NCBI GenBank assembly: GCA_965655095.1
Contig: OZ296650.1
Coordinates: 35,464,001-35,528,000 of the forward strand
Source of the DNA: Haplodiscus bocki
Taxonomy: Eukaryota
Direction: 5' to 3'
Length of the DNA stretch: 64,000 bases
Part shown: positions 5,196 to 64,000 of the stretch, in pieces
How positions within the stretch are numbered: the first letter of the stretch is position 1
How the letters are laid out: the number at the start of each line of letters is the position of its first letter
Position numbers and translations under genes: made by a program
Notes under the pieces: model-generated
Database searches by the model: none
Seen by the model: only the letters and a program-made list of their open reading frames with translations
Told to the model about the DNA's origin: nothing

Positions 5196-6027
5196 GTAAC
5201 AGAATGTGGTCTTTCCAACCACTGAACCCATCTCTTGTGCCATTGATTCCCGGAGGCGACTTGGTTGAGTCGTTTGTTGATGCTTTTAGTGGGTTTCATG
5301 CTCAAACTAAAACTTAAAGACAAAATGATTTTTTGAAGGTTTACATTGGCGCAAACAGCAAGTCCACGCACCGTTTGTCAGCTTAGAATCAACGTTGTTT
5401 CGGCAAGCGGTCAATCTTGACTTTTGAAGACAAGTGTGTCAAAGGAAAACAACCGGAATCATCAGAACAGTTTTAACAAGCGCACAAGAATCAATGTATT
5501 GATTTGCATGATCAATTGGAACGATTTTGGACTTTGCTTCGTGGTTTAGGACTCAAAACGGCAAACTCGAATTTAACCTAGTTAAAAAATTACCCGGTAC
5601 CACCAGTGTTAATTGAACGAGATGTTGAACCAAAAATGACCAACAAAGCTGATGATTTTGTTTTTTTTTCCAGTTCTAAGATGTTCAATTGTTAGATTTC
5701 CTGAATTTTTTTTGAGGACAACAGGCCAAGATTTCTTCCTGAAAACATTTGAAACGACTTCAATCAAAAATGTTTCTGGATGTGAAAATCTGGATGACTA
5801 GAAAAACTCAACAAATCTCATTTACTGCATTCTCAAGCATACATTAGAATAATGCGCAATTAAAACCTCTTGCAAAGAAGAATTGAGCTTCTCCAAGCCT
5901 GTTAGACGGTGGCAGGAGAACCAATGGTTTGCTAACCAAATTGAAAACGATTTGGTCACATGCGTTTGAACGAGATGAACACCCATACTTGTTGACAGTG
6001 TGAGAACAAGTAAAAATGTGCACATGT
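5196..6027 (+). repeat. Truncated array unit (~830 bp) with ~725-bp internal deletion
   Basis: Junction CCCGGAGGCGA|CTTGGTTGAG at 5259/5260 joins two sequences that lie ~725 bp apart in normal units. Marker spacing here is 5172 to 6002. Confidence 0.95.
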
Positions 6028-12000: not shown

Positions 12001-15000
12001 TTTCTGGATGTGAAAGTCTTGATGACTAGAAAAACTCAACAAATCTCATTTACTGCATTCTCAAGCATACATTAAAAATGCGTAGTTATGACCCTCTTGA
12101 AAAGAAGAATTGAGCTTCTTCAAGCCTGTTAGACGGAGGCAGAAGAACCAGTGGACTGCTAACCAAATTGAAAACAATTTGATCACATCCGTTTGAACGA
12201 GATGAATACCAGTACTTGATGACAGTGTGAGAACAAAAAAAAAAGTGCACATGTGTCAGAATGGGGTCTTTGGAACCTTTGAACCCATCTTTTGTGCCAT
12301 TGATTCCTGGAGGCGAAAAAAGTTTTACGCCCGGTGGAAAGACAATATTCATGTTTAGGTCAGGATCCTGCCACTTAAGCTTAATGTCTTCGAGATGCGA
12401 CATCGGATACTCACTTGCGTCCATCTGTGTTGCGCCTTTACTCGAGTGTGGTGCCTGCTATATCTACACAGTAGCTTCCTGGTTGGGAGACAATGGTACT
12501 CTCGCTAATTGGGTGTCCAAAAGGTCTTAACTCTGCTGAAGTAGCAGATTCTACGCAGCGCTGGATTATTAGTGGTCGGATCCATGACTGACGAGCTTGC
12601 GACAAAGAGTATAAACAAGCGCTCTATTCTCCAACATTTGTAACAGAATAAAAGTCATACTTGCTATGTCCTAATTTTCGCCGTACTCTTTAAGCCTCAC
12701 CGCTGCTCTAATATGGTCAATTCATCAAGAAAGATCCGAATGAGGAGCGACAACCTGTTAAATTGTCATAAAATTTTTTTGAAGTTTTACAACACAACGT
12801 GTCTCAACCACGGAGATCCTTGTCTGATGAACTGCATTTCTTTCCAGATTTGGAGAATAGGTAATCAAAAGCTTTCAAGAACATGGAAAAATTTGACTCT
12901 CAAAAGCTTTGTGCGTAAGATAGCTTTCATAGTTGTACCGATACTACAAATTGGATCGGCAGGACCGTACATGATTTTCATAAACTTCGTCCAACTTGAA
13001 ATTAGCTCCAATTTTGCAAGGCAAGTCGAATCCGAGGTACTTGGTTGAGTCGTTTGTTGATGCTTTTAGTCGGTTTCATTCACAAACTAAAACTTAAAGA
13101 CAAAATGATTTTTTTGAAGGTTTACAGTGGCGCAAACAGCAAGTCCACGCGGCGTTTGTCATTTTAGAATCAACGTTGTTTCGGCAAGCGGTGAGTTTTG
13201 ACTTTTGAAGACAAGTGTGTCAAAGGAAAAGAACTGGAATCATCAGAACAGTTTTAACAAACGCACAAGAATCAATGTTTTGATTTGCAGGATCAATTGG
13301 AACGATTTTGGGCTTTGCTTCGTGGTTTAGGGTTCAAAACGGCACACTTCAATTTAACCTAGTTAAAAAAGTACCCGGTACCACCAGTGTTAATTGAACA
13401 AGATGTTGAAACAAAAATGAACAAAAAAGCTGACCATTTTGTTTTTTTTTTCAAGTTCTGAGATGTGCAGTTGTTAGATATCTTGAATTTTTTCGAGGAC
13501 AACAGGCCTTGATTTCTTCCTGAAAGCATTTGAAACGACTTCAACCAAATATGTTTCTGGATGTGAAAGTCTTGATGACTAGAAAAACTCAACAAATCTC
13601 ATTTACTGCATTCTCAAGCATACATTAAAAAAATGCGAAGTTATAACCCTCTTGAAAAGAAGAATTGAGCTTCTTCAAGCCTGTTAGACGGAGGCAGAAG
13701 AACCAGTGGACTCCTAACCAAATTGAAAACAATTTGATCACATCCACTTGAACGAGATGAATACCAGTACTTGTTGACAGTGTGAGAACAAAAAAAATGT
13801 GCACATGTGTCAGAATGGGGTGTTTGGAACCTTTGAACCCATCTTTTGTGCCATTGATTCCTGGAGGCGAAAAAAGTTTTACGCCCGGTGGAAAGACAAT
13901 ATTCATGTTTAGGTCAGGATCCTGCCACTTAAGCTTAATGTCTTCGAGATGCGACATCGGATACTCACTTGCGTCCATCTGTGTTGCGCCTTTACTCGAG
14001 TGTGGTGCCTACTATATCTACACAGTAGCTTCCTGGTTGGGAGACAATAGTACTCTCGCTAATCGGGTGTCCAAAAGGTCTTAACTCTGCTGAAGTAGCA
14101 GATTCTACGCAGCGCTGGATTGTTAGTGATCGGATCCTTGACTGACGAGCTTGCGACAAAGAGTATAAACAAGCGCTCTATTCTCCAACATTTGTAACAG
14201 AATAAAAGTCATACTGGCTATGTCCTAAAGGTCGCCGTACTCTTTAAATGTCACCGCTGCTCTAATGTGGTCGTTTCATCAAGAAAGATCCGACGAATGA
14301 GGAGCGACACCAGTTAATTTGTCATAATTTTTTTTGACGTTTTACAACACAACGTGTCTCAACCACGGGGATCCTTGTCTAATGAACTGCGTTTTTCTTC
14401 AGATTTTAACAATAGAAAATCAAAAGCTTTCAAGAACATGGAAAAATTTGACTCTCAAAACCTTTGCGTGTAAGATAACTTCTTTAGTTGTACCGATACC
14501 ACAATTTAGATCGGCAGAATCGTACATGATTTTCATCAATTTCGTCCAACTTGAAATTAGCTCCACTTTTGCGAGGCAAATCCAATCCGAGGTATTTGGT
14601 TGAGTCATTTGTTGACGCTTCTAGTGGGTTTCATGCACAAATCAAAACTCAAAGACAAAATTACTTTTTGGAAGGTGTGCATTGGCGCAAACAGCAAGTC
14701 CACGCACCGTTTGTCAATTTAGAAACAACGTTGTTTCGACAAGCGGTCAATCTTGACTTTTGAAGACAAGTGTGTCAAAGGAAAACAACCGGAATCATCA
14801 GAACAGTTTTAACAAACGCACAAGAATCAATGTATTGATTTGCAGGATCAATTGGAACGATTTTGGGCTTTGCTTCGTGGTTTAGGATTGAAAACGGCAA
14901 ACTCCAATTTAACCTAGTTAAAAAAGTACCCGGTACCACCAGTGTTAATTGAACGAGATGTTGAACCAAAAATGACCAAAAAGCTGACCATTTTGTTTTT

Positions 15001-45250: not shown

Positions 45251-47869
45251 TGCGCAGAAGTGTCGCTGTCGATATGTTAAAAGCGATCCCCCATTTTCAA
45301 CTAAGTTACACAAAAAACTCGTCATCATTTCCATAATCCAGAACAAAACTGACTGGTGAATCAACAAAATGCAGTTAACCGCCACACTCAAATATACTGC
45401 TTTTTACGGATTCCGTTATAGATGACAGTTTTTAACGAGAAATTGTTCCCGAAATGATCGACAAGCAGAATGACGTTCACTTTTGTTATCAGTTTGTGGA
45501 TTGCTTGAACGCCTTCGTCTATTTCAAAATCAGTGGGCGCGTATGTACATCAAACAAACATCTCAACAGAAGCAGGAAGAGAGAGTTGCAAAATCTAACG
45601 AACACTTGGTAGGGTGGGATCGAAAACACAGAATATCGAGGAAACAGATCGAGGAGGAAACACCTTGTACTTTAACGAAACCAACCTCGAAAAGGCAAAA
45701 GCAAAACAAGTGCTAAAACGCAGTGCAACAATCCAGTGAAGTAGGTATGAAAACGATATGTCGAGATTAATTGATTGCCTTTCTGATGTATTCGTGGGTA
45801 ATGAAAAAATTTTGAATGCCCTGAAGTTAATGCACGTTGTAGCTCAAATTTTGCAGCCTCAAAGTTAAAACAATTAAAATTCTTCAGATATCAGTTCCGG
45901 GTTTGTAAACTTCCAATCTTTGATGTAACATAAAACTTAAAGCAGAAGGCCCCTTTTTAATACAAAATATAGTTTGTGGCTTTTATTGGACAAAATTTTC
46001 TCAAATAACAACCAAAGCAAAACCCGCGAAAAGCTTTTGCGTTTGATATGAAGTGACATGTTTTTTGATACCTTTCAGTTCTATGCCAAAAACTGTACAG
46101 TTCTCAACATCTGTCTGGAAACGAAAGTACGTGGATCTTTTTAGCCAATCTTCCTTGTTGTCCTGAATCTGCGCATAGGCCTAATAATATTACGAACCAC
46201 AGTCAGTACCAAATTCAGACACCAGTATTTTTTTTATTCTTCACGCTAAGCCTAGCCAGCAGTGTCTGAGGTTCAAAGTGGAAATTAGTTGAGGACGCTT
46301 CGTTTCAAGATTACCTAGCAAAAAGGATAACTTCGTCGTTGAAGAAATTTCGTTTATCAAACCTTGTGGTTGTAAACCTTTTTATTAGGTCCATCAAAGC
46401 AAAATTTTTACGTAATTGCACAATGCCTGGTTGCACTCATGACACATATAAAATGCCGGCCGGGTTAGGGCTTCTTTGAGAGCGAAAAAACTTCAACTTT
46501 GCAGTTGTTAGTCAGGAGTAGAAGAAAAGTCCGATCTCAAAAACCTTCCGCTAAACCAGTGCTGATATCTTGTGCCTCACCTCTATTGACAAACGGAAAA
46601 GCTATAGCCTCATGAGTTTTCCGGTTCAAAGGCTCTGTCAAACTGTACCGGTTAGAAAGTGTGTAATAGCGCATTGAAGTGTCGTGTTTTCACATTTTCT
46701 TTTTTCTTCAAATTTTGGGGAAGTTTTTTCAAGGCCTTTTGCTTTTTTTAGTAATAAGAAAAACGTATACTTCATTTATACATTTCGTTGAGAGAAATTT
46801 CCAACTTCATGACTTCCATTAGTCGGCCCGGGCCGCAACTGGAAGAGAGAACAACTAGGTTTTCGAGAAAAAGTCACTGGAGCGCAAGTATGCAGTTACA
46901 AAGGCTGACTTTCAATCGGCACCTCTTTCTTGGTGCGGGCTTGCAAACCCTCAATGTTCCAGGCCATTTTAATATGTATTTTCAAACACGCAATGTTTCT
47001 GCCCCAACAATTAAAGGTAGCGTGTTGTCTATAAAATGCAGGAACGTTAAACAAGCTGCAATTTCTGCGAGCCAGTATCTTTTGGTCAATAAAAGCCATT
47101 CCTGGTTTTTGGACCAGGATGGAGAACCCCTAAAAGGAGCATCTTAGTCTTTCGTAAAACAGGATTGTTCCACCAATTGTCGGTATTCGACATGAATTGA
47201 TGTTTTTTGGATGGTTTTTCATATGGTATCGACGGAGTGACTGCTAACTCCCTCGAAGATGCTTCATTCAATTCTTCGTAGCCGTTCTAAACCAGCGACT
47301 TTTTAGGAGAGAGTTGTTAATAGTCTTGATGAACACAGATTGATTTGTAGTGCAAAAGTATTTTGCGACACTGTTGTTTTGATATCTCAATCCACATTGT
47401 ACAATCTACACGTCATTTGAGATTATAGAGACCAAAGTTATGTGCTGAGTAGAAGCAAAGTGTTTTTTTGGGATTTCACATCCATGAAAACTGTAGACAC
47501 AAAGTTGGTCGATGACTGATCGATCAACTCCAGAGACACTATATGACCTGTAACAGCACTTTACACCCGCTTCAACAGTCTTTCGCCTTTTTTCGTTCAA
47601 CTATAGTAAGCGTTAAGTTTCTGGGCAGTTTCACTTTCTCCTAGAAAACAACTCTGAGTTCTCCTGCACGAATTACCATCACAAATTCCGTTATTTCGCC
47701 CATCCGTTATTCAAATCGTTGGATGAGGTTTTGCCCATCAGATGAGTTTTCGAAGCGAAAGTAACATACTACCGAAATGCGGACAATTTCGGCGTCCAAA
47801 TCTCCTGTTACTTCCTTTCAATGACACTTTTTTCCTCATGAGACTCTTCGCGAATCTCTTCTGGAAACT

Positions 47870-48800
47870 TCCGGTTAAAACGGCTGCTTTTAACTATTTT
47901 TTTCGAAGCGCAATGGGCCCCAAAAGTCTCAGTAACGACGCAACATGCTGAACACGCACGAGTGTCCTCTAGTTGGCGTTTTTCAAAACAATCAAACAAC
48001 ATGCACTCGTTGGTTAGGGTCCCGATTGTGCGCATCAAAAAGAGCGTTCTCTCAGCGGTGGATAGGTGTGCAGGAAAGTTGAGAATTCAAAATAACTGTG
48101 TAGATTATATGCTGAATTTTCAGCCCCTACGTCTGTAGGCAAAAAGTTTTTTCTCCAAGTGATGTCTCTGTGACTCAGCAATACGCTACCACGTGCAGAT
48201 CGGAAAATTTCACTAAAATGCTGACGCATTATATTTTCAACGTATATCGGAGTTTTTAATTTTTTTCAAGAATATTCTTTCTTGCGATTTATTGATTTAT
48301 CCAAAAGCGAGAGATACACACGACTCGTTTTTGTCAAAAAAGTCTTGACCTTTTGAATATATTTGTTAGCACCCGGGCTGGAAATTGTTTAGGGGGCAAC
48401 TTTTTCTTCGAGTGGATTGACGTATCAGAGAGCATTCATGTATATAAAGTGGATTGTACTGCTAAGGCCTGCGTTCGTATGCTACATATTTGAGGTACTA
48501 ACATTCCACTTTCGAAGTGTTTGGCTGTTTCTTTTCTTGTCAATTCGAATATTCAAAGTTGTTGCCCTATGCGTTGGTTTTGGTGCGCCGTAAAGGAATT
48601 GCGGAAACGTTCCCAAAACTTCAGTTTTTACGGTTGACATTCTCGTTTTGACCAGCTGATCCGCTTTCGTTCTTCACCCTGGTCCAGAATCCGCCAAAGA
48701 AAGTGGGCAACGGTTCATTTGGTTTCGAATGAGTTGCCAGAGCACATGCATGGACCTGTTTTCAATTTTTAGGAATACTCAAAGGCTTTCATGCAAAACA
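47870..48800 (-). pseudogene. Possible Polinton major capsid protein remnant
   Basis: Minus-strand fragments EVLGTFPQFLYGAPK..RATTLNIRIDKKRN, TISSPGANKYIQ and IGTLT..LFD...LEDT...VTETFG fall in the order expected for the C-terminal half of a Polinton double-jelly-roll capsid protein. Heavily decayed. Confidence 0.3.
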
Positions 48801-49349
48801 AGGGTTGGGTTGCTAGAGTTTTCTTTCGAGAAATTCGAACAGTCAGGTCTGTGGCAATAAGAAGACAGCAGAAGCTTGCTGAACAACTGCCCGACTGTCA
48901 TACATGAACTTGCACTGACTTGCACCTAAGCCTGAGTGTTGGCAAGTGGTACGGTTGCTTTTGGATTGCGAATCCATCGTGTAATAATAGCCGTTACTTT
49001 TCAGGTACGAACTTGTAGTAAAAAGCTTCTGAATGTAATGCTGGGAGCTGTCTTCCAGAGCATTGGGTTCGAAGTGCTAACTACATTTAAGTACAATGAT
49101 TTAGTCTGGAAAACCCACTTCCTGCAGCGATGTGACCGCAAATGGCTTTTTCTAAGACGTTGGTAGTTTCAGCTCGTCCTTTGTTCATTTAATAAATGCC
49201 TTCAGGTCCTGCATAGGCTGATCTGATTGTTATACCCAATCAAATCAGTACTTATTGCTGCATGGGCCTAATGGAGCCTCCGTTAGCCTCATCAACTTCA
49301 AGATAGCCAGCCAACGAAGTTCAAGCCCTTAGGTTACTCTTTGAAGCGC

Positions 49350-49910
49350 ACTTTACACATTACCGCAGTTTCGTGAGCCTCACAAAGTGTTACAAATCCT
49401 CCAGTCTTTCACCTTAATGTCATGTCGCAACTTCATTCATGCGAGAATCATCCAACTTCTTACCTCCACTTGCAGTAAGTTGGGTTCTAACAGCTGTTGC
49501 ATGTTTCTGAGCTCTACAGTTTTTGTTTTGTCTGTTTTCGCCAAATGTCTAAGCTTTGATTCATTCCCACGACAATGCTCTCTAGGTCTAAAAACTTTCT
49601 GTTGAACCGCAAATTTTGAAAATACACAAGTCATCATGTTTTCTCGGTAAAAGTTAACAAAACCTTAGTAGTATCCTAAAGTATTGCAGGCTTCATTTTT
49701 AATTTTTTAGTTTTCCGAGCCGTTTTTGTTGTTTTGAAGAATCCGTGGTGTAAAAACACAGCTACAATTTCACATTCCAACGGAAGTTGAATTCATTCGC
49801 AGGTTTCCAAACAAAAGTACCTGATAATTCACGGAATTATTTGTTATGACATTTTCGAGAGGATACACCAGGTGTGCGCAAAATAGAAGACTAAAGTGTC
49901 ATTAATATGG
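49350..49910 (-). pseudogene. Probable Polinton packaging ATPase (A32-like) remnant
   Basis: Decayed Walker-A-position LVYPLENVIT (~49870), Walker-B-like HDDLC (~49635), then EHCRG..KLRHL..TDKTKTVELRNMQQLL (ORF 49437..49637), resembling GRH.....KHNL...K...VELQN of Polinton ATPases. Confidence 0.45.
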
Positions 49911-50359
49911 AATCCATGTCTGTAACTAGAGTTTTTTACTTCTTAATCAATCAGCTTATCAAAAACCTTCTGCATCACGGTGCAAAGTGAAGACTCCATG
50001 CTAATTCAAAAAACCAAATTTTTTCGAAGTTAAGGATCACAATACCCAAAATTGAACATTATTTCCTTTTTTGTATTTTGAAGAACTAACAGTCAATGCT
50101 TACACAAGTACAAACGTCCCCACTTGTTTTTAGACTTCGATTTTACGTTAATAAATTGTACAACCCAAAAACTCGATCCAAATACAAATGCTTCACAAAA
50201 ACCATACATGCTACATTGTATGGATTTATTGTTTTCCGCCATATTTGAAATCTGGAAGCAAAATCTTCCTCTCAAATCGATGCGGTTTGTAGCCGATGTT
50301 TTCCAATTGCGTTCACGCGGAACGATGTAGGCCAAAAAGTTCGCGTTTCTGAACGTGAG

Positions 50360-50715
50360 TATTTTTTTAGCAAATTGTAGCAATTGTGCCGTAGAATACG
50401 ATTGAAAAGGTGAGATTTCTCAAAACGAGCCTAATTTTTTTTGGGAAAAAGTTTTTTTTAGAAAAAATCCTTGAATTTTTTCGAATTCGCCCATTTCGGC
50501 GAGTGTTTCTTAGAATGCTTATCAAATGGTAATCTTTCCTGAAAACGTGTTCCTGTCTTATCTGTAAGGTTTTTGACTGAAAATCAGAAAAATTTTAACG
50601 GTGGAAAAATTTGAGAATTTGATAAAGTATTCTGAGAAAAAAACGTTTTCTTTCAAAAAAGGCGTCTTTATCAAAGTGTAAGGGCGCAAAATATGCCGGT
50701 GGAAGCTGGACGTCT
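50360..50715 (-). repeat. Short interspersed repeat, copy 1 (~355 bp)
   Basis: Reverse complement matches 57959-58320, including an exact 20-mer CCACCGGCATATTTTGCGCC and CG.ATTCTACGGCA.A.TTGCTACAA. Confidence 0.85.
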
Positions 50716-51039
50716 CTTTTGCATTGTATCCAAGTATCCGCAGATGTTAAAATATCTACAATCGTAATAAAAAACCTCGGTCTTATTTTTTGGCAGGCGC
50801 AAGTAATAGTTTCACCCCCCCCCCCCCTCGAGTAATATTGCACGGTGCCCTGAAAGATGTCCCATGAAAAGGTTCAGTTTTTTTGAAAGGGCTGAGAGTG
50901 CTGAATATGAGTCATTAGAAACTATTCGATACCTTTTCTCAATGCAATACCTTTTAGCTTATGCTCCTGCATTACCAAACACACTGGGCACAGATTGCCC
51001 TTTTTAATGCATGGCGCGCCAAAGTCACTCAGCTTTTGC

Positions 51040-52700
51040 TGACAGTCAAACACATGCCCTAATTATATTATATTGCCGAAGTATACTTTTTTCAAGAAAT
51101 GGCTGCATGAATCATCTCAGCTTCGAGAGTTTGAAGACTATTTCAAAATATATAAGGCTTTGCGCCCTGCTGCTCCTAATCTGCTCATTATTCCACCTCT
51201 ATGATGAATTCTCCCTTAGAAAATGCATCGCTATGGAAACCTGCCGAAATCCGACTATTGTCATTCGGATACACTATTGACTGAAAAAAAGCAAAAAAAA
51301 AGACTTCGATAATGCCATGCTCACCGCTCCAACGACGTTTCAAAGTCCCCTGCTTCGTTAGTTTTTTTTGACACTTCGAGCGTTTCAGCTCCATTCGTCA
51401 TCCTACAGAAAAAATTCCTTTCATACTTTTGGAAACCGGATCAACCCTGGGATCAAAAAAGTCTGCCCTTTTGGCACACCACAAGAACAACTTGTTTCAG
51501 ACACAATAAAGACCAGCTTGCCATCAATCGTGCAGCCATATTTCGTTTTCAACCGCGCTCTTGATCTTATAGTGAATTTGAGCCAGAAACAGAAATTTTG
51601 TTGACCATTAAGTCTACGCAATACCCCGCTCAACTAGTCCTCGCGAACTGATTTTTGTTACCAAAAATAGCAGACGTCGTCGACCACAGTGTCAGGGGTC
51701 TCAAGCCGCCGAAAATTCCGAGAAGCGGAAAGAAGGGCCGTCGTTTTTGTTGAACTGTCTTCTACGTCGCCGTTAAGACCTCCGTATCAACGAACGAGAT
51801 CTTCAAGCGTTCTCCAATGGAGTCAAGGAACCCGTACTTTTCGACGTTTCTCGAACTCACACCGTCCCTTGACAACCCCTCCAGCCAGTTTCTCTTTCTG
51901 CCGTTTTCCCGAAACTTCATAAGATCGCTGGTTATTCTTCGACGAATTCCACTGTGGCCATTTTATCATTTGCCAATCAGAACCTCAGACCTTCTATGCA
52001 GCCATTCGGCAGTAAAAACAGAGTTTGTAACCATGGGCGAAGCAACTGTTGTCTTTTTGTCCGTTTCTCAGCAGCAGGCCGTCCACTTCGGTAACGCTTA
52101 TTTGCCACGCGTCACTCGCCTATCCGTTGTTTCGGATGCACAAGAACGCAATGCCAAGTTTTGCCTCTAGCACTATCACGGACTTTGCTACCACGCTTTA
52201 CCAAAAGACGTGAAAACTTACCATCGTTGACGATTCCTTGTTCTAGGTGTCCTTTGCAATCTCTGCTCATCAATCAAGATCGCAGTTTGGTCAGCCACCG
52301 ATTGCGTACCGAACGCATTCAACCTGTGGTAGCTGATCCAGCGCAATACCGCTTTTTACAACGTTCCAGTCACCCCTCTTGTTTGAAGACAACGGTGTTT
52401 AATTCCTGGGACCAAATCACTAAATGGCAGGAAATCCCAGAAGCACTGCGAATTCAAATTCCCCTGCCTAATCCCTCGCGCTTTGCACCTTGAATTATGT
52501 CCTGCAATCATAACTGACAGTTTGCTGAACACTTTCCTCCAGTTTACCTTTGGCCGTGCACATCCTGGCCTGCTGCAATCCCACAATGAAACAAACTTGA
52601 CTGAAGCTTGTCGTGAGGTACAGGAAACATTGAACACGAGAATTAGGTCCAACCAGGTGATGATTCGCGAAGCTGAGATGCGATGGAATCTGAATCAGCC
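51040..52700 (-). mobile_element. Decayed Ty3/Gypsy-like LTR retrotransposon fragment (gag-protease)
   Basis: Locally higher GC. Minus-strand gag-like NWRKVFSKLSVMIAGHN, a ruined CCHC-like R*YGGLNGDV (~51790) and a protease-site-like GKLVFIVSETSCSC (~51500), in the expected order. No LTRs identified. Confidence 0.4.
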
Positions 52701-54499
52701 CGTCCCGCGACACTTGAGTGGCGTTTTCAAAAGGATGATAAAAGAGCCAAAAGGACGCTCTTGGTGATCTTTGGTTCCCCAAAACTAAGCATTGAGTCCT
52801 TTTAACACAATCCTTGTTGCAAAAGAATCGATGTTGAACTTGGGACTCCTCACTCACGTTTATCCACAACCTAAGAATGAAGAAACCCAGACTATACATC
52901 TTTTTTTTTCATATACGCCCCAGGTTGTATGCATTTACACCGCCTGCAAAACTAGACAAAACGTCCGTCAGTATCTTCCGAGTCGTTGAGGGAGGTACAG
53001 ATTTTCAACTGTTTTTGGAGACGGTTTTCGCTGGAATATTTTACTCTTCCACTTCCGAAGGAAATGGCATGATGAAGGCACTCTGCAAATAGGTGATGTG
53101 GTTTAAATCCTCTGCGATTTGATGTCAAGAGGAATTTGGCCAGGGTTAATGACAGCATCCCACTCAAGTAAAGATGGTGTAACGAGTGTGCTTGGTGAAG
53201 ACAACCAAGGGAATTTTCGAACTCCCCGCTGTCTCCCTTTCACGTGTTTACCTCATAACGGTTCGTCTCTGACCCACTGTTAACTTAGGAACATTCTCGC
53301 TTGCTCTCCTTCTCGCAGCTCAGAGAATCGAGCATGTCGCGTTTGTGACTCACTAAAACTTCAGTTAGCTAAACTTCGAATTCAATGTTAACTGATATTC
53401 TATGAGAGTGGCTAAGTAAATTAAGAAATTTGTAGGTGGATTCATGGTGAATTGCCTCTAATGAGAGTGGGAACTCTTTTTTATACTACACCAGGAAAGG
53501 CAGACTTTACAGTCATTGTTGACTTCGTTAGTTCCTGGGTTTTCTATGTTAGGTTTGCAAATCGACGCCTACAAAAGCGGTACACTGAAAAATTCCAGCG
53601 AGAAAATCTGGACAGAGCGCCAAGAATTCCAGCTTTCTACTCGAATAAGTATTGGTCCGATCACATTTATAACCCCTCCTGAAAAAACTAGTCAAATTGA
53701 TGGAATTAATTGTATCTACCAGATGGCTGTTGCTCACTATTTTTTGACGGTAACCTTGTTCGATGCTCAATATACACACTTCTATGTTCAGGGAATACAG
53801 CCTTTATGAGTTTACCTAAAAAGTAGTGCTAAGAAGCTCTCAGCTGCAACGCACTTCTAGGAAGAATGATCAGTCAAAAATTCGACTGGCTTTCAGTGAA
53901 ATTGGTTCTAGTACCGGCCAGAATTCACAAAACAGATCAGGTACGCCCCTAACATAAATCAAACAAAATGGTACAAAAACATATCTACGTGAAAGAAGTT
54001 TTTGTTACCCAGAAAAGCGCATCTTAAGCGCAGATTGCTATTCCTACAAATCAGATGCTTGCTACCAAAATCACATACTCTGAAAGTTTTCCTGGTCAAA
54101 AAATGCAAGAAGGATACAAAAAAGCTGGCGCTCAATACACCACAAGAGACATCAGAAAATGGGGAACATTCACGACGGAGAAAGAGAAAGTTTTATTTGG
54201 TCTTTTTTAGCTTCAAGCAATTCTTCAAAACTTTTCTAATCCAACCTTCTACCTCATCAACTGGATAATCACACTCAATGCGCAAATATTTTCCGCGTTG
54301 TATAAACTTTTTGTCAAAATTCTGAATAACTTCGCGATTTCGAAGAGTTCTATTTCAGTCTCTATTTCAGCCGGGATTTTCTTGACACTGTTTTTTTAAA
54401 GTGAGTTGTCTTTCTTTCGAAAAAGCTTAACCAGTGATCTTCCTTGTACTGATACAACCGTGTGCAGAGGCGAACTGTGATCCGCACGAACTTGCGAGA

Positions 54500-58320: not shown

Positions 58321-58636
58321 GTAATTTTTTGTCAAAAAGTTCAATTGATTAACGAGTATCTCTTGACATCAAATTTAGCATTTACAAAAATATATTCGTC
58401 TACAGGAATGTCAACTTTCGGCGGATTTTCAACAAACTGTAATTTCAAAATGAATCATCAAGTAAAATGAAAATACAAGAAGCGCTAACAAAAAATTGGA
58501 TTGTCTTGGGCTGCTGCCAGTGCTTATATGAGAAGTGACAAACAGTCAACACTATCTAAAACAGTCAATCCTCATCCACCTGAAGCAACTTATTGGGTTT
58601 TATTCCATTATCGGAATTACTTTTGATTCCTTTGTA

Positions 58637-59806
58637 TAGTGGTGAGCGAAAAAAATGTCGCATTGAAAATTCTCTTTTTTCTCCAAATCAAAAGCAAACA
58701 AAGAACAGATTTTTCAACGGAGCAACACAACGATATATCGTCTCTCGATTTGCTTTAGATTAATTCTCCTTGTAATCTCTTACAGGACTTTAGACGCTTT
58801 CCAACAGAATTCATCAAATTTTCTCTGATTTCCCTCGTGATGACACTTTTGGAAGTCTGTATTGCTTCAATCAGTTCTTGCTTGGTTTTTGGATTTTTTT
58901 GCTCAACTGCATTTTTCAATATTTCCCAGACGTTTTCTATGGGATTTACGTCTGGGGAATTGGGAGGCCACTGCAGAAATTGAAGATTTTTTTCTTCAAA
59001 AAATTCCATCGTTTTTCTGGCGGTGTGAGGTGTCGCACCGTCTTGCTCAAGGATCCAGCCTTCAGGATACAGACGGTTTGCGTAAGGAATAAACTCATCC
59101 ACAATTTGGCAATACTTTTCTGCATTGACAGTCCCGCCTTCAATGATTTTCAGGTAAAAATCTCTTAAGCTGAGTGAACCCCATACCATAACTTTTTGGC
59201 AAAACTTTGGACGAGGTTTTTTGGGTTTTTCGTCTTTTAAGCACCAAACTTTTGTGGTATTAAGTTCTGGCACAATTTTTGGCAATTTTTGCACATATCC
59301 TGATGAGAAGAAGTATTTTGCTACCGTAGTCCGATGCGCTGTCTTTCCAGTTTCCTGAGCCACAATCTGCGAGAGTTTTGAGGATGATGAAAGCGGATTA
59401 CTGCGAGCAAATTCACAGATTTTTTGCCTTTCGGAGTCTGAAAACATCCTCGGTCGTCCAGATCCAACCTTCCGTCCCAGTCTTTCTCCGTTTTCGAGCT
59501 TTTTCATGTTTCGCTGAAATGTTCTTGGGGCCATACTTGATAAGTTTCGTAAGGTGTTCCGATCATGAGTTAACTCATTGAAGCATAATTCAAGAATATC
59601 TCGCTGCTTCTGCATGTTTTCACGAAATCGTGAACAAACTTTACGTGTTCTGCTTCTCAGCAGCTACACACGAGAGAATAAATGTTACATGTTTTGAAAG
59701 AGAAGTTCCATGTCTATATATTGTGTAAATATCAAGAACATTCGTCGGTTCAAAGATTCACAATAACCCTTTTTGTAAAAGCGACATTTTTTTTCGCTGA
59801 CCACTA
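58637..59806 (-). mobile_element. Tc1-like (Tc1/mariner, D34E) DNA transposon, 1170 bp
   Basis: TIRs TAGTGGTGAGCGAAAAAAATGTCGC (58637-58661) and GCGACATTTTTTTTCGCTGACCACTA (59781-59806). TA on both flanks (58635-36, 59807-08). Single internal transposase ORF. Confidence 0.95.
58755..59615 (-). CDS. Tc1-family transposase, 286 aa, in-frame deletion of the first catalytic-Asp region
   Basis: GSGRPR linker, HTH region, VMVWG, QDGATPH...WPPNSPDVNPIENVW (34 residues between D and E). No W..V.FSDE block between PKIVPEL and NTTKVW. Confidence 0.92.
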   Translation of the reverse strand: MQKQRDILELCFNELTHDRNTLRNLSSMAPRTFQRNMKKLENGERLGRKVGSGRPRMFSDSERQKICEFARSNPLSSSSKLSQIVAQETGKTAHRTTVAKYFFSSGYVQKLPKIVPELNTTKVWCLKDEKPKKPRPKFCQKVMVWGSLSLRDFYLKIIEGGTVNAEKYCQIVDEFIPYANRLYPEGWILEQDGATPHTARKTMEFFEEKNLQFLQWPPNSPDVNPIENVWEILKNAVEQKNPKTKQELIEAIQTSKSVITREIRENLMNSVGKRLKSCKRLQGELI

Positions 59807-60917
59807 TACTTAATCATAGTAGATATACAAATTTTAAACACAATTTAAACAAAGTTCGCGATAAAAAATGAAGAGCCAATCCCGTCAAATTGTAAGAAAT
59901 TCACGGCAACGAGTAGTGTAATGAGCACAGGATGGACACAATCCGACAAACATTCTTCAAGAAATGAACTACACAAAACAAGACATGTCCAGTAATTCAA
60001 ACACAAGTTAGGATAGCAGCTCAATAGAAGTTCCGGGCAGCGAGTACATAAATCACCACTGAAATTACACAATACGAGGTTTACTCATTGAGACAAAATT
60101 GTTTTTCAATGAACAAATCAAGGAAAAACACCGCTGAACTTCCATAACAGGTTATGAAATTCCGTAACAAAATTGGGAAACAGTTATTCATGGCAAAACC
60201 GCAGGACTTCTGAGCAGCAACAATTCTATCAAGCACTGGTTAGACGCGATCCCACGAGTAACTTTCAAAACACTTGTGAGTGCAGGGAACTGCAAACCTT
60301 CGTCTTTAGAATTTTAAATACGTACCGCTGTAGTTCCTTTCATTCAAACGAGAAGACAAGCTGGATATTAGGCCACGTGAAGAATATTTTGACAGACGAC
60401 TCAGCACGAAAAACCTTCTCAATCAAGTACGTATCCCCCACTACTGTTTTAGAGCTGAAGTGAGACTGCAAAAAAGACATGCGAAACGGAATCAACATTT
60501 TGCTAGGGTCAAAAAACGCAGCTTCAGCAAAATCTTCAGTAACTTCAGTTTGACTTACAAAAGATGGTTCGATTTTACCCAGCCATAAAAACTTGGTTGT
60601 TCAAGAAATCTCGTAAAAACATAGGCAGCAATGGACTTGGGCATAAAGCCATTAAGCGCCAAGAATTAGGTAGGAAGTGAAAAAAATAAATTGTCACACC
60701 CATTCGCGAGAAAAATTAATTGCGCGATTTCAGCAAAAACCTTCTGCTAGAACACGGCACCACTTCAGATAGGCCTCAAAATACACATTTACAGTGCAAT
60801 GAGAATCTTCTCGAGTCTGGCCAGTCAAAAACTTGATTAGCCACATTTTCATTCTGGCGAGGGCAAAAGATTTTGGAATAACAACAGCCCGAAAATTTCA
60901 ACAATTAATATTTTAAA

Positions 60918-61554
60918 ATGTGAGAACGGGACCAGGACAAAACTGCCGTTTTTTAAGAGACAAAACTGCCAATTTTGTAAATGAGACAAAAACGCCAATT
61001 TTGTAAATGAGAGAAAACCGTCGGTTTTGTAAATGAGAACATACTGCCATCAAATTTTTTTCCGATAGAAGCGTCTTGGCCAAATTATCGATAATTAGCA
61101 ATTATATTACCAATTACTCAAAGGAACTGCAATACTACTACTTAAATTCGATTTATTTCAATGTGTGACAAATAAATTTTCGAAAATGCCATCAGCAAAA
61201 ACTCCCATGAAACTCTCTTTTCCGTATACCTAAGTTTGTAGTGCCCCGCCTCCCTATTTTTCGTGTACCGAACTGCTCTGAATAACTAAAATTTCTTTTT
61301 CGGAAAAACTACAAGACCATTACCGAAATATTCAGAAAGGGTCTTTCCGGACATTTTCGGTTCATGGAAGGGCGCATCAAGAGGGCATCATTAATCTATC
61401 GTTAATTTAATTACTGGCGTTATTAGGCCACGACGCGTTCATCTTCAAAAAAAAGACTGAAAAATGGGCGATCTGTATTATCATCAATCGGTGGTTCTGT
61501 CTCATTTTCAAAATCTCACGTTTTCAAAATGGGCGGTTTTGTCTCACCTCACAT
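60918..61554. mobile_element. MITE/foldback-like element with inverted 26-bp subterminal repeats
   Basis: Ends ATGTGAG / CTCACAT. 26-bp unit GAGACAAAACTGCCAATTTTGTAAAT at 60957, 60983, 61009 and 61035; inverted related copies at ~61460-61547. No target-site duplication recognised. Confidence 0.6.
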
Positions 61555-62374
61555 CCAGATCAACTTTTGCTGTTCTATTCTTGTTAAACATGCTAATTTT
61601 ACAGAGGAACCGCTGATTAAACCGCAGTATCTCAAACCTCCATTCTCGTATTTCGGATTTTAGCAGAATGTGTAAACTAATTGATAAATAAATTCAATCA
61701 AATAATGTAACAAAACTATTATACTTGCATAACTTTACATCTGATTGGAATAGATTTAAGCAACATCATTCCACCGACTGGTCAATTCACTACAAAGAAC
61801 ATTTCAGCATTCCAAATATTTGTGTTTGTTTGGCCCGATAAGTTGCAAAAGGAAACACAAGTTTCAGTAATTTAGGCTAAAAATTTAATAATAATCATCT
61901 TATCGTCCTATATTTATGGAAATTATTGCACTGGATGTAGACAAAAATTTATTCCACATATAAAACACCGGGCAAGGGAAAATATCGCAAAAAAAACGAA
62001 CATACAAGCAACCCTGTCATTTTTATCATTAGCTTTCATCACTAATGCGACGTTTATATCATTCATTCGATACACTATTTCCATCAAAAACAAGTTCTCC
62101 TTTCACGGTGCGACAAAATTTCGTGAAATTTTCTTCGGTGAACCGCTGGGTTACTTGAATGGAAGGAATATAAACATCAGAGTTCGCTGAGACATCACTC
62201 CAAGAAAACGACGAAGGAGTTACCTAGACGACAGAAAGGCCAAGAAAGCTCGCGATATTTTGCTTTTTAATCTTTCCATTTTCAAAAACACTCATTCGAA
62301 TGCAATTTTGAATTTTCAGCAATATATGCAAGAATTTGAGATCGAAAAACAAAAAGTCACGAGAGCTTTTCTTT

Positions 62375-63066
62375 TTATATTTGCAACTTTAGCAAACCTT
62401 GATATTGGGAATCACAGCACAAGTAGCATGACCACCCTGGTGCGGTTTTGCCCCCTCCGCTAAGTCGGGAGCTATCGAGGGCGGCTTTAGTTAGAGACAA
62501 CGTATAAAGATTATCAAATAACTCAGTGGAAACTAAACCTGAAATACACTGCTCACAATAAGAGTAGAGACAATTGGGTTGCGTGCATCGTAATAACTTC
62601 TTGGGTGACGAGCAACATATGCAACAGATTGATCTTAGATAATCTAAATCTAACTGCATGACATCCTCTTCTAGTTCATTATTAATAACACTGACGGCTG
62701 GCGCTGATTCTAGTATGGAGATTAAATTTTTAGTAACTTTGGGTAAACAATCTTCACAGACCCCGCCCACGAATATAGGATGAGGAACAGCGACGTTTTT
62801 TGATGTGCAACACAGGCATAACTTCTTCAAGTGATAAGACGAAGTGCATCCATCAAATCGTTTGCTCCTGCTGCGAGTTGTTAATGGTGAAGGAGAAAAT
62901 GGTATCGCATTTTGAGTAGGTGCCCGAGTTTTAGATGCAGGCGTTCCACCCGCAGAATGCTTCTTGGATGCGCAATAATCGAGGGGCCCTGAAGATATAT
63001 CGACTCGTGACCTCGATTTGGGTTTGATATTAACCGGAGAAACTAAATTTGAGTGCTCTCGGTTGT
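62375..63066 (-). CDS. Terminal coding exon: second, complete ADD (ATRX-DNMT3-DNMT3L) zinc-finger domain
   Basis: CLCC....VPHPIFVGGVCEDC ... CCICC....LLRCTQPNCLYSYCEQCI ... WSCYLC.....GLLKLQI-TAA matches the GATA-like + PHD pattern of the DNMT3 ADD domain (HPLFVGGMC, WNCYMC, GLL). Confidence 0.9.
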
Positions 63067-63372
63067 CTGAAAACGAAACAAAATCAAAACAGAACTAATT
63101 AATAGCCCATTTCGCTGTTCTTGAAGTTACTATAACTTGTAAAGCAAGTCACTGGAGTTCCAACATGGTTCCAAAGTTTGGAATTTCCTGACTTATCGTA
63201 TCGGAAGTTTCACAAGCTTCGAACTCATTTTGATTTGGTTCAACTTAAATTAATTTGAGTCGCTTTTGCGCCATCAATTTCGATAGCTTGGTTTTCAAAG
63301 GAATAAAACATTTTTTCAGAGATACAAAAACATCTTTTCCCTCTATTTGGTACAATTTTCAAAAGTTCTAAC
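63067..63372 (-). other. Spliceosomal GT-AG intron, 306 nt, phase 1
   Basis: Donor GTTAGA; acceptor TTTTGATTTTGTTTCGTTTTCAG. Splicing creates GAC and a stop-free frame running 78 codons into ORF 62375..62830. Confidence 0.85.
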
Positions 63373-64000
63373 CATTTAAAGCAAAAGGAGTGCTTGCAGC
63401 TGCAGCAGCCGTAGTGATACTTTTGCACAGGGGTAGATTTTGGTCGCATGCAGCAGGTAGACAGTTATTATTGGCGATATCACTCCCTGCAGGCGAATGT
63501 TGTTCGGGTGGCAACATGTTCTCCTTTTGCAACGCCACATTTTGCCTTCCAAAGCCCAAATCAGCCAGAGTGACATCATCGTCATCATCGCAAAACACGC
63601 TGAACATCCGGCCTCTTCTTTCCCTGACGTCATCAGGACTGTTGTCTAAGGTCCTGCTACTATCACGCGACTCCACTTCTGCTACGTGTTCAAGCACCTT
63701 GGGAGTAGCAGTGGTAGTACAAGCACTATCTCTCGCAGCAATTCTCACATGTATTGGCTCCTCCCGATTATTGGCTTTGCTATTAAGGTGACTACACGAT
63801 TCATGATGTTGAGCCACGTTGTTGGGACAAGGATCACCTTGAGTCGACGACTTCGAAGAGTTAGAATCACTGTTAGAGACAGCTGTTAGAAACTTATAAT
63901 TTATTTTAGCACCATTAGTCATAAATTTATCGTAACTATATTTCCATTGGGATCTAACTTGCAGTAATCCTAGATTCTCTTGTGTGCACAAAATGCAATT
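63373..64000 (-). CDS. Exon (5'-open) of DNMT3-type ADD-domain gene: end of first ADD domain plus low-complexity linker
   Basis: Open frame from the window edge, NCILCTQENLGLLQVRSQWKYSYDKFM, resembles the DNMT3 ADD end (WNCYMC....GLL.RR..W...LQ.F). Donor G|GTTAGA at 63373/63372. Confidence 0.8.

What the first reader, a model, noticed from the sequence alone, without database searches (positions are those of the whole stretch)
62375..64000. Tandem-ADD protein: two DNMT3-type histone-reader domains and no methyltransferase after them
Seen: the window edge encodes the tail of one ADD domain (NCILC...GLLQVRSQW). After a long Ser/Pro/acidic linker split by one intron comes a full second ADD, then TAA immediately after GLLKLQI. 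Established: DNMT3A/B/L have a single ADD followed by a (pseudo)methyltransferase domain, ATRX has one ADD far upstream of its helicase, and ADD reads the H3 tail (unmethylated K4). Inference: a derived DNMT3-like chromatin reader with duplicated ADDs and a lost catalytic domain, possibly a bivalent H3 reader in methylation-independent silencing. Its position beside a repeat block may be coincidental.
Basis: partly seen in the sequence, partly recalled or inferred. Interest (0 to 1): 0.7.

Follow-up and report, generated by a model that had tools for sequence, protein, structure and literature searches.

The report
Acoel protein with two DNMT3-type ADD domains
The window edge holds the last two exons of a conserved acoel-worm gene whose protein has two histone-tail-reading ADD modules of the DNA-methyltransferase-3 type but no methyltransferase; this domain layout was found in no other organism searched and its function is untested.

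Summary
On the minus strand, window 64000-63373 and 63066-62378 are two exons joined across a 306-bp phase-1 intron. They encode the tail of ADD1, a disordered linker and a complete ADD2, and the frame stops at TAA (62377-62375) directly after GLLKLQI. A contig of the same genome (L002, 100% identical over the overlap) supplies the rest of ADD1.

Orthologues exist in three other acoels. Two are RefSeq models called only "uncharacterized protein" (Symsagittifera roscoffensis, 690 aa; Convolutriloba macropyga, 675 aa). Both have the layout N-terminal motif, ADD1, linker, ADD2, and both end ...LKLQI.

- No C5-methyltransferase or PWWP similarity was found in these proteins, in the 62 kb downstream in the window, or in 4.6-10 kb downstream at the other loci.
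- dN/dS is 0.10-0.14, so this is a working gene, not a decayed one.
- Both ADDs keep all 12 zinc-binding cysteines and the acidic pair that in DNMT3A binds unmethylated H3K4.
- Both fold like DNMT3 ADDs and group with DNMT3-type, not ATRX-type, ADDs.

Among 119 relatives in 1.84 billion representative proteins, only the acoel proteins have two full ADDs and no methyltransferase. Histone binding, any silencing role and acoel DNA methylation remain untested. This is a new variant of a known kind, of moderate interest.

The parts
63373..64000 (-). Exon (cut by the window edge): last 19 residues of ADD1 (NCILC...GLLQVRSQW), the post-ADD helix segment (KYSYDKFMTNGAKIN), a variable Ser/acidic linker, and the conserved disordered motif DDDVTLADLGF...QKENMLPPEQHSPAGSDIANNNCLPAACDQNL.
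   Evidence: Translation. Identical to P0002 from the same genome. Aligns with the L001 orthologue; dN/dS is 0.12 in the ADD1 tail, and in the motif pN is 0.056 against pS 0.79. AlphaFold gives pLDDT below 50 for the linker.
63067..63372 (-). Intron, 306 bp, phase 1, GT...AG. The position and phase are the same in L001 and in the Convolutriloba locus, and the donor is the same in the Symsagittifera locus.
   Evidence: Splice-site reading and an in-frame join that reproduces the orthologue alignment.
62378..63066 (-). Last coding exon: a basic/Ser-rich linker (IKPKSRSRVD, SRSKRF), then the complete ADD2. ADD2 has a GATA-like C4 finger (CLCC...CEDC), a roughly 20-residue insert, and a PHD-type finger (CCICC...C...C...C..C...C..C), and ends GLLKLQI.
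   Evidence: Translation. Pfam PF17980 at 32.8 bits and PF21255 at 20.7 bits. PDB hits to DNMT3L/3A. All 12 zinc-ligand cysteines are aligned and invariant. AlphaFold pLDDT is 76.6, and all 50 listed Foldseek matches are DNMT3 ADDs. dN/dS is 0.105.
62375..62377 (-). TAA stop codon directly after ...GLLKLQI. The C-terminus is the same in four acoel species.
   Evidence: blastn similarity to L001 ends at 62374.
61659..61947 (-). Conserved non-coding block about 430 bp after the stop; possibly the end of the 3' UTR or a separate element. Its link to the gene is not shown.
   Evidence: 81% identity by blastn and 87% mean column identity in the alignment to L001 11166-11461. It is single-copy and has no Rfam match.

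Best explanation
The window holds the 3' two exons of a functional, acoel-specific gene. The protein (about 610-700 aa) consists of a short conserved N-terminal motif, a canonical DNMT3-type ADD domain (ADD1), a roughly 230-270-residue disordered linker carrying conserved short motifs, and a second, more derived DNMT3-type ADD (ADD2) that ends the protein. It has no PWWP and no C5-methyltransferase domain, so it cannot methylate DNA.

The most likely mechanism is inferred, not shown. Each ADD would dock on a histone H3 N-terminal tail that is unmethylated at K4, as DNMT3A/3L ADDs do. Two such modules on a flexible tether would give avidity for the two H3 tails of one nucleosome or of neighbouring nucleosomes. 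The conserved disordered motifs would recruit or regulate partner proteins. On this reading it is a stand-alone chromatin reader/adaptor derived from DNMT3, not an enzyme. It is also not a DNMT3L-type cofactor, because it lacks the methyltransferase-like fold through which DNMT3L binds DNMT3A.
For: SHOWN
- Gene structure and splice phase are established and are the same in three other species.
- The full ADD1 is present in the same genome.
- The full-length RefSeq orthologues P0121 and P0124 have the same layout and the same C-terminus, and match only ADD Pfam families.
- Purifying selection acts on the gene: dN/dS is 0.14 overall, 0.105 in ADD2 and 0.12 in the ADD1 tail, with dS about 1.
- No methyltransferase or PWWP similarity was found in the window or in loci L001-L005, with working positive controls.
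- All 12 zinc ligands are invariant. The residue matching human DNMT3A D529 is Asp in all eight acoel ADDs, and the one matching D531 is Asp or Glu. Those two residues are needed for H3K4me0 binding (PMC10393158).
- The ADD1 model superposes on DNMT3A ADD crystal structures at TM 0.90 and rmsd 1.6 A. The listed matches of the ADD2 model are all DNMT3A/B/L ADDs, with E down to 2e-8.
- Both ADDs lie inside the DNMT3-type clade and outside ATRX-type ADDs.
- The linker is predicted disordered.

INFERRED: H3 binding by each ADD, bivalency, and partner recruitment by the linker motifs.
Against: - No binding, expression or localisation data exist.
- ADD2 is derived. It has inserts between and within the fingers, its Pfam PHD-half score is below the cut-off in the window species (20.7 against 27), and its TM-score to DNMT3 ADDs is only 0.5-0.6.
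- Positions matching DNMT3A G532, Y533 and Q534 are changed in ADD2, and the chain stops where DNMT3 ADDs continue into a C-terminal helix. ADD2 may therefore bind something other than H3.
- DNMT3A's ADD also binds non-histone partners at the same site (MeCP2, title and abstract of PMC9798253 as listed).
- Whether acoels methylate DNA is unknown, so 'methylation-independent' cannot be asserted.
Confidence: 0.5

Rival explanations
1. It regulates or targets a catalytic DNMT3 that acoels still possess, as a functional analogue of DNMT3L or DNMT3B3. The two ADDs would sense H3K4me0, and the conserved linker motifs would bind the enzyme.
For: Both ADDs are of DNMT3 origin. The linker motifs are strongly conserved and have no assigned partner. 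Catalytically dead DNMT3 relatives acting as cofactors are an established theme; see the abstracts of PMC6326784 and PMC7608744.
Against: DNMT3L and DNMT3B3 bind DNMT3A/B through their methyltransferase-like fold, which is absent here. No acoel catalytic DNMT3 turned up among the hits that were named, but most hits were unnamed, and the targeted search was uninformative. CpG o/e of 0.84-0.98 over about 150 kb gives no sign of heavy germline CpG methylation; this is weak evidence.
Confidence: 0.15
2. Only ADD1 reads histone H3. ADD2 has been repurposed as a protein-protein or intramolecular module, for example binding one of the protein's own conserved linker motifs as an autoinhibitory lid, in the way the DNMT3A ADD binds its own catalytic domain.
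For: ADD2 has a much longer branch than ADD1 (2.67 against 1.58), lineage-specific inserts, changed residues around the acidic pair and a truncated C-terminal helix. The DNMT3A ADD is known to use its H3 site for autoinhibition and for MeCP2 (PMC9798253).
Against: The zinc ligands and the D-x-D/E pair are kept in all four species under dN/dS 0.105. No predicted contact is available, because only the separate halves were modelled.
Confidence: 0.25
3. It is a decaying remnant or mis-joined fragment of one or two DNMT3 genes (a pseudogene or an annotation artefact), or the catalytic exons lie further downstream.
For: All near-full-length DNMT3-type ADDs outside acoels are followed within about 20 residues by a methyltransferase domain. 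A fish model (P0043) shows ADD-MT-ADD-MT from a fused tandem pair.
Against: The reading frames are intact, the splice phase is conserved and the C-terminus is identical in four species. dN/dS is 0.10-0.14 with saturated dS. There is no methyltransferase similarity in 62 kb downstream in the window or 4.6-10 kb downstream in the other species. The linker shows no relic of the catalytic domain (hmmsearch --max gave nothing; hhalign probability 0.1%).
Confidence: 0.03

Closest known systems
DNMT3A / DNMT3B (animal de novo DNA methyltransferases)
   Same: Both ADDs are of this type. This rests on sequence (E 2.6e-18 for ADD1), fold (TM 0.90), zinc ligands and the D529/D531-equivalent acidic pair, and tree position.
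   Different: There are two ADDs instead of one, with no PWWP and no C5-methyltransferase domain. The protein ends where DNMT3 proteins run on from the ADD towards the catalytic domain.
DNMT3L (catalytically inactive mammalian cofactor)
   Same: A non-catalytic DNMT3 derivative that keeps an H3K4me0-reading ADD and lacks PWWP. It is the best PDB sequence match of ADD2.
   Different: DNMT3L keeps the methyltransferase-like fold that contacts DNMT3A, and this protein has none. The acoel ADDs do not group with the clade holding the named DNMT3L sequence P0009.
Drosophila dADD1 (CG8290), an ADD-only protein split from ATRX (PMC4249797)
   Same: A stand-alone ADD protein that has lost the enzymatic domain of its parent family, in an animal lineage with reduced chromatin-modifying machinery. 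It is the closest analogy in logic.
   Different: According to that paper, dADD1 corresponds to the ATRX amino-terminus, which carries the ADD. The acoel ADDs are DNMT3-type and there are two of them.
ATRX ADD domain
   Same: The same overall GATA-like plus PHD architecture.
   Different: ATRX-type ADDs (P0088, P0120) are only marginal hits (E 1.6e-5 and 9.5e-4) and form the outgroup. No ATRX entry appears at E of 1 or better in the PDB sequence searches.
Chaetognath DNMT3 copies that lost ADD and PWWP (PMC12460157)
   Same: They show that the DNMT3 targeting modules and the catalytic domain can be uncoupled in evolution.
   Different: It is the reciprocal case: there the enzyme survives without its readers, and here the readers survive without the enzyme.

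Membership tests
ADD domain, DNMT3 subtype (Pfam PF17980 + PF21255) | GATA-like C4 zinc finger followed by a PHD-type finger: 12 zinc-ligand cysteines in the canonical spacing | tested here: met
   All 12 cysteines are aligned; 11 are invariant and one (C38) nearly invariant across ADD1 and ADD2 of four acoels and 12 DNMT3 ADDs.
ADD domain, DNMT3 subtype (Pfam PF17980 + PF21255) | Scores above Pfam's curated cut-offs for both halves | tested here: inconclusive
   Window ADD2: PF17980 at 32.8 (above 26), PF21255 at 20.7 (below 27). ADD1 of the same species: PF21255 at 38 (above 27), PF17980 at 19.9 (below 26). In P0124 both families pass for the whole protein. Each domain passes one half-model and narrowly misses the other.
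ADD domain, DNMT3 subtype (Pfam PF17980 + PF21255) | ADD three-dimensional fold | tested here: met
   ADD1 model: TM 0.90, rmsd 1.6 A to 4qbr/8ba5. ADD2 model: pLDDT 76.6, and all 50 listed matches are DNMT3A/B/L ADDs, with TM 0.5-0.6.
ADD domain, DNMT3 subtype (Pfam PF17980 + PF21255) | C-terminal helix after the second finger (G-L-L-x-R-x-x-W-...) | tested here: inconclusive
   ADD1 has it (GLLQVRSQWKYSYDKF; helix 191-201). ADD2 stops after GLLKLQI, so the helix is cut short.
ADD domain, DNMT3 subtype (Pfam PF17980 + PF21255) | Groups with DNMT3 rather than ATRX ADDs | tested here: met
   The DNMT3-type clade including both acoel ADDs has 100/99 support against an ATRX-type outgroup.
ADD domain, DNMT3 subtype (Pfam PF17980 + PF21255) | Binds the H3 tail with unmethylated K4 | not testable with these tools
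   Sequence proxy only: the acidic pair matching D529/D531 is kept in both ADDs.
DNMT3 enzymes (C5 cytosine methyltransferases) | C5-methyltransferase domain (PF00145) with its catalytic motifs | tested here: not met
   No PF00145 in P0121, P0124 or P0002, against a positive control P0006. An MTase profile and hhalign against the linker gave nothing. tblastn against the window and loci gave a best E of 0.57.
DNMT3 enzymes (C5 cytosine methyltransferases) | PWWP domain N-terminal to the ADD (present in most, not all, members) | tested here: not met
   No Pfam hit in the N-terminal parts. PWWP probes hit only the control locus L006.
DNMT3L-like inactive cofactors | Methyltransferase-like fold that pairs with DNMT3A/B | tested here: not met
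   The same tests as for the catalytic domain. The region after ADD1 is predicted disordered.
ATRX / dADD1 family | ATRX-type ADD; SNF2 helicase (ATRX) or MADF domains (dADD1, from my own knowledge) | tested here: not met
   The ADDs are DNMT3-type, and no other Pfam domain is present in the full-length orthologues.

The most novel reading that the evidence does not exclude
Acoels kept and doubled only the chromatin-targeting module of DNMT3. They would use it as a stand-alone bivalent reader of unmethylated H3K4 that recruits a silencing or other effector through its conserved disordered motifs, independently of cytosine methylation. That would be a natural experiment showing that the DNMT3 ADD has a function separable from DNA methylation.
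Probability: 0.25. Interest if true: 0.75.

Novelty: new variant of a known kind. Interest (0 to 1): 0.55.

Why it matters
ADD domains are the part of the de novo DNA-methylation machinery that reads the histone H3K4 state. Outside ATRX and its fly offshoot dADD1, they are known only as regulatory parts of DNMT3 enzymes or of DNMT3L.

A conserved, selected protein made of two DNMT3-type ADDs and nothing catalytic would be a DNMT3-derived reader-only protein. It occurs in acoels, a lineage often placed near the base of Bilateria, and none of six full-text searches found any paper on their DNA-methylation machinery.

If it binds H3K4me0 bivalently, it offers a simple natural system for asking what ADD-mediated chromatin reading does without methylation. 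It also gives a marker for tracing how the DNMT3 toolkit was dismantled in this lineage. If acoels do methylate DNA, it is a candidate new type of DNMT regulator.

Tried and rejected
1. Relic methyltransferase in the linker. By eye, R.FSVF.DDDDDVTLADLGF resembles DNMT3 motif I and SPAGSDIANNNCLPA resembles motif IV with Cys changed to Ala. I tested this with a 44-sequence DNMT3 catalytic-domain profile (hmmsearch --max, no real hit) and with hhalign (probability 0.1%). The FSVF part is also not conserved in Symsagittifera or Convolutriloba. Rejected as unsupported.

2. Downstream catalytic exons. tblastn with ten catalytic domains found none, although the ADD controls worked.

3. Upstream PWWP. 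None was found.

4. Known RNA in the conserved block after the stop. No Rfam match.

5. Sister relation of ADD1 and ADD2. The quick 95-row tree joined them weakly with firefly DNMT3s, which is long-branch attraction. The careful 55-row tree leaves both unresolved, and the AU test neither shows nor rejects one clade (p 0.46).

6. Catalytic DNMT3 in acoels.
   - Naming 28 of the hits found none from acoels.
   - A word search with a hemichordate catalytic domain listed only the best 120 of 946 hits, all vertebrate or hemichordate, so it was uninformative.
   - Six literature searches found no paper on acoel DNMTs or 5mC.

7. Pfam on ORFs of the satellite and of the GC-richer 46-53 kb stretch gave nothing.

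8. Exact exon 1 / exon 2 junction in the window's species. It lies outside the window and could not be fixed without RNA data.

Full report
WHAT IS IN THE WINDOW

The gene lies on the minus strand. Translation from the window edge (64000) downwards gives NCILCTQENLGLLQVRSQWKYSYDKFMTNGAKIN..., followed by a Ser- and acid-rich stretch. The frame is interrupted at AATG|GTTAGA. The exon ends at 63373, the 306-bp intron (63372-63067) ends in TTTTCAG, and the next exon (63066-62378) continues in phase 1. That exon encodes a basic/Ser-rich stretch and then a complete cysteine-rich domain ending ...GWSCYLCCDSQYQGLLKLQI, directly followed by TAA at 62377-62375. The window has no N, and nothing in it resembles human sequence, a toxin or an animal virus, so the operators' special rules did not come into play.

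ARE THESE ADD DOMAINS?

- **ADD2, sequence.** The second domain passes Pfam's cut-off for the GATA-like half of the DNMT3 ADD (PF17980, 32.8 bits against 26). It narrowly misses the cut-off for the PHD half (PF21255, 20.7 against 27). Against PDB sequences it hits only DNMT3L/3A/3B ADDs, with E down to 3e-8.
- **ADD1, completeness.** The edge fragment is the end of a complete first ADD. The word search found one relative (P0001), whose contig (L001) carries a 405-aa exon with a full ADD1.
- **ADD1 in the window's own genome.** The exhaustive search with the L001 exon found P0002. Its contig L002 is 100% identical to window 64000-53368, so it belongs to the same genome, and it supplies the rest of ADD1.
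- **ADD1, similarity.** The L001 ADD1 exon matches human DNMT3A ADD at E 2.6e-18.
- **Conserved residues.** In a 20-row alignment all 12 zinc-ligand cysteines line up. Eleven are invariant and one is nearly so. The residue matching human D529 is Asp in all eight acoel ADDs, and the one matching D531 is Asp or Glu. These two residues are required for H3K4me0 binding and autoinhibition in DNMT3A (PMC10393158).
- **Predicted structures.** The AlphaFold model of ADD1 superposes on DNMT3A ADD crystal structures at TM 0.90 and rmsd 1.6 A. The ADD2 model has pLDDT 76.6 and pTM 0.72, and all 50 listed matches are DNMT3A/B/L ADDs at TM 0.5-0.6.
- **How ADD2 differs.** It has an insert of about 20 residues between the fingers and lineage-specific inserts in the PHD part. 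It stops where other ADDs continue into a helix.

WHOSE GENE IS IT, AND IS IT REAL?

The clusters of the two more distant hits contain RefSeq proteins of the acoels Symsagittifera roscoffensis (XP_063710705.1, 690 aa) and Convolutriloba macropyga (XP_075250371.1, 675 aa). Both are named only "uncharacterized protein". The window therefore comes from an acoel or a close relative; the species was not identified.

Both RefSeq models have the layout N-terminal motif, ADD1, linker, ADD2 and end ...G(I/L)LKLQI. Pfam finds only the two ADD families in them.

The intron in the linker has the same position and phase in the window, in L001 and in the Convolutriloba locus, and the donor is the same in the Symsagittifera locus. 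In the window's species and in L001, the N-terminal motif (LPSWL.DKD.P..KYPRL) sits on a separate exon 2-2.5 kb upstream, outside the window. That junction is inferred.

Between the window and L001, dN/dS is 0.14 overall, 0.105 in ADD2 and 0.12 in the ADD1 tail, with synonymous sites near saturation. All indels are in-frame. This is a gene under purifying selection, not a relic.

NO METHYLTRANSFERASE, NO PWWP

- Ten DNMT3 catalytic domains searched by tblastn against the window (62 kb downstream of the stop) and loci L001-L005 (4.6-10 kb downstream) gave nothing better than E 0.57. The ADD parts of the same proteins hit at up to 1e-20.
- PWWP probes hit only a control locus.
- DNA similarity between the window and L001 stops exactly at the stop codon.
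- By eye, the linker's conserved island recalls catalytic motifs I and IV, so I tested whether it is a decayed methyltransferase. A catalytic-domain profile and hhalign give no support (probability 0.1%). AlphaFold predicts the whole linker to be disordered.

HOW UNUSUAL IS THE ARCHITECTURE?

The exhaustive search of 1.84 billion representative proteins returned 119 hits at E of 1e-3 or better. Four are the acoel proteins (E 1e-161 to 1e-74). There is then a gap to E 1e-16, where ordinary DNMT3A/B/L proteins begin.

I classified all hits with an ADD profile and a catalytic-domain probe. Only the acoel proteins have two full ADDs and no catalytic domain. In near-full-length hits the ADD is followed within about 20 residues by the methyltransferase domain. 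The few hits with two ADD stretches are not comparable:
- a fused ADD-MT-ADD-MT fish gene model (P0043);
- a protein with an extra partial ADD plus an ADD-MT unit (P0073);
- a single ADD split into two stretches (P0117).

Six full-text searches found no paper on acoel DNMTs, on 5mC in acoels or on such a protein. The nearest published analogue is Drosophila dADD1, an ADD-only protein corresponding to the ATRX amino-terminus (PMC4249797).

ORIGIN

With ATRX-type ADDs (P0088, P0120) as outgroup, both acoel ADDs fall inside the DNMT3-type clade (100/99). Each forms its own well-supported clade (ADD1 97/99, ADD2 100/100). The split into the window+L001 pair and the Symsagittifera+Convolutriloba pair is seen within ADD1 and partly within ADD2. 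The two-ADD state therefore predates the split of these four species.

Their position within the DNMT3 clade is unresolved. An apparent link to firefly DNMT3s in the larger quick tree is long-branch attraction. An AU test does not reject ADD1 and ADD2 as one clade (p 0.46). An internal duplication is therefore compatible with the data but not shown.

That a catalytic domain was lost is inferred from the rule that near-full-length DNMT3-type ADDs elsewhere are attached to one.

LIKELY MECHANISM

The protein cannot methylate DNA. It also cannot act like DNMT3L, which contacts DNMT3A through a methyltransferase-like fold. What it keeps, under selection, is two H3-tail-reading modules and several short disordered motifs. 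The main linker motif is DD..(T/I)LAD(L/F)...QKENM.P..SPAGSDIANNNCLPA(A/S)CDQNL, and the N-terminal one is WL.DKDPP.KYPRL.

The best-supported reading is a stand-alone chromatin reader/adaptor. Each ADD would bind an H3 tail unmethylated at K4, the pair would give avidity for nucleosomes, and the motifs would recruit partners. I put this at about 0.5.

The main rivals are:
- ADD2 has been repurposed for a non-histone or intramolecular ligand (0.25);
- the protein regulates a still-undetected acoel DNMT (0.15);
- it is a pseudogene or an annotation artefact, which the data effectively exclude (0.03).

Whether acoels methylate DNA is open. CpG o/e of 0.84-0.98 over about 150 kb of acoel sequence shows no strong depletion, but this is weak evidence. 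My targeted protein search was uninformative because only the best 120 of 946 hits were listed.

VERDICT

This is a new variant of a known kind: DNMT3-type ADDs in a tandem, enzyme-free protein, so far seen only in acoels and annotated only as uncharacterized. Interest is moderate (0.55). It would rise if H3K4me0 bivalent reading, or absence of DNA methylation in acoels, were demonstrated.

Noticed in passing
window 1-33708: A satellite of about 1,556-bp units, at least 21 head-to-tail copies that are 76-95% identical to the unit at 12001-13560, running off the window start. Its recurring ~115-aa ORFs on both strands have no Pfam match. It ends 28.7 kb from the ADD gene, so it is not adjacent.
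   Followed up: partly
window 58634-59809: A compact Tc1/mariner-type element. Terminal inverted repeats of about 36 bp (58634-58669 / 59773-59809) flank an uninterrupted 286-aa DDE_3 transposase ORF at 58755-59615 on the minus strand, so it may still be mobile.
   Followed up: partly
window 61659-61947 (= L001 11166-11461): A single-copy non-coding block about 430 bp after the stop codon. It is 81% identical by blastn (87% mean column identity in the alignment) between the two species, better conserved than the coding exons (74-79%) even though synonymous sites are saturated. An AATAAA sits at its 5' edge and there is no Rfam match. It could be a 3' UTR element, a non-coding RNA or the end of a convergent gene.
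   Followed up: partly
window 63400-63600 (minus strand) and the orthologues: A disordered-linker motif kept in all four acoels: DD..(T/I)LAD(L/F)...QKENM.P..SPAGSDIANNNCLPA(A/S)CDQNL. In the window-L001 comparison pN is 0.056 against pS 0.79, and pLDDT is below 50. It contains a KEN tripeptide followed by SP, which resembles a degron or CDK site; that resemblance is from my own knowledge and was not tested.
   Followed up: partly
L002 ~7599-7800; L001 ~5897-6100: A probable first exon with an N-terminal motif (M.ELPSWL.DKD.P..KYPRLEF...LFNDIP.STF). In Symsagittifera and Convolutriloba the motif is in the same exon as ADD1. It has no Pfam match, and the junction to the ADD1 exon is not determined.
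   Followed up: partly
L006 10001-11917 (ENA ERZ26222911): A single exon encoding PWWP-PWWP-ADD and the first residues of methyltransferase motif I. It is a canonical DNMT3 of an unidentified eukaryote that groups with protostome-type DNMT3 ADDs. It served as the positive control for the PWWP probes.
   Followed up: partly
window 60936-61049: A short tandem repeat, 26-bp unit, 4.5 copies, 80% matches.
   Followed up: no
window 46000-54000: A stretch with higher G+C (0.40-0.44) and negative GC skew compared with its surroundings. Its ORFs of 110-134 aa have no Pfam match, and there is no Rfam match.
   Followed up: partly
L001 619-2351 and 3240-3482: Upstream of the orthologous gene in the sister species there are ORFs that look like a zinc-finger/hAT-type transposase remnant. 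On the other strand there is the start of a transporter-like gene (MGYEEVLRRVGSDGIFQRCFAFFGAF...). Both were judged by eye only.
   Followed up: no
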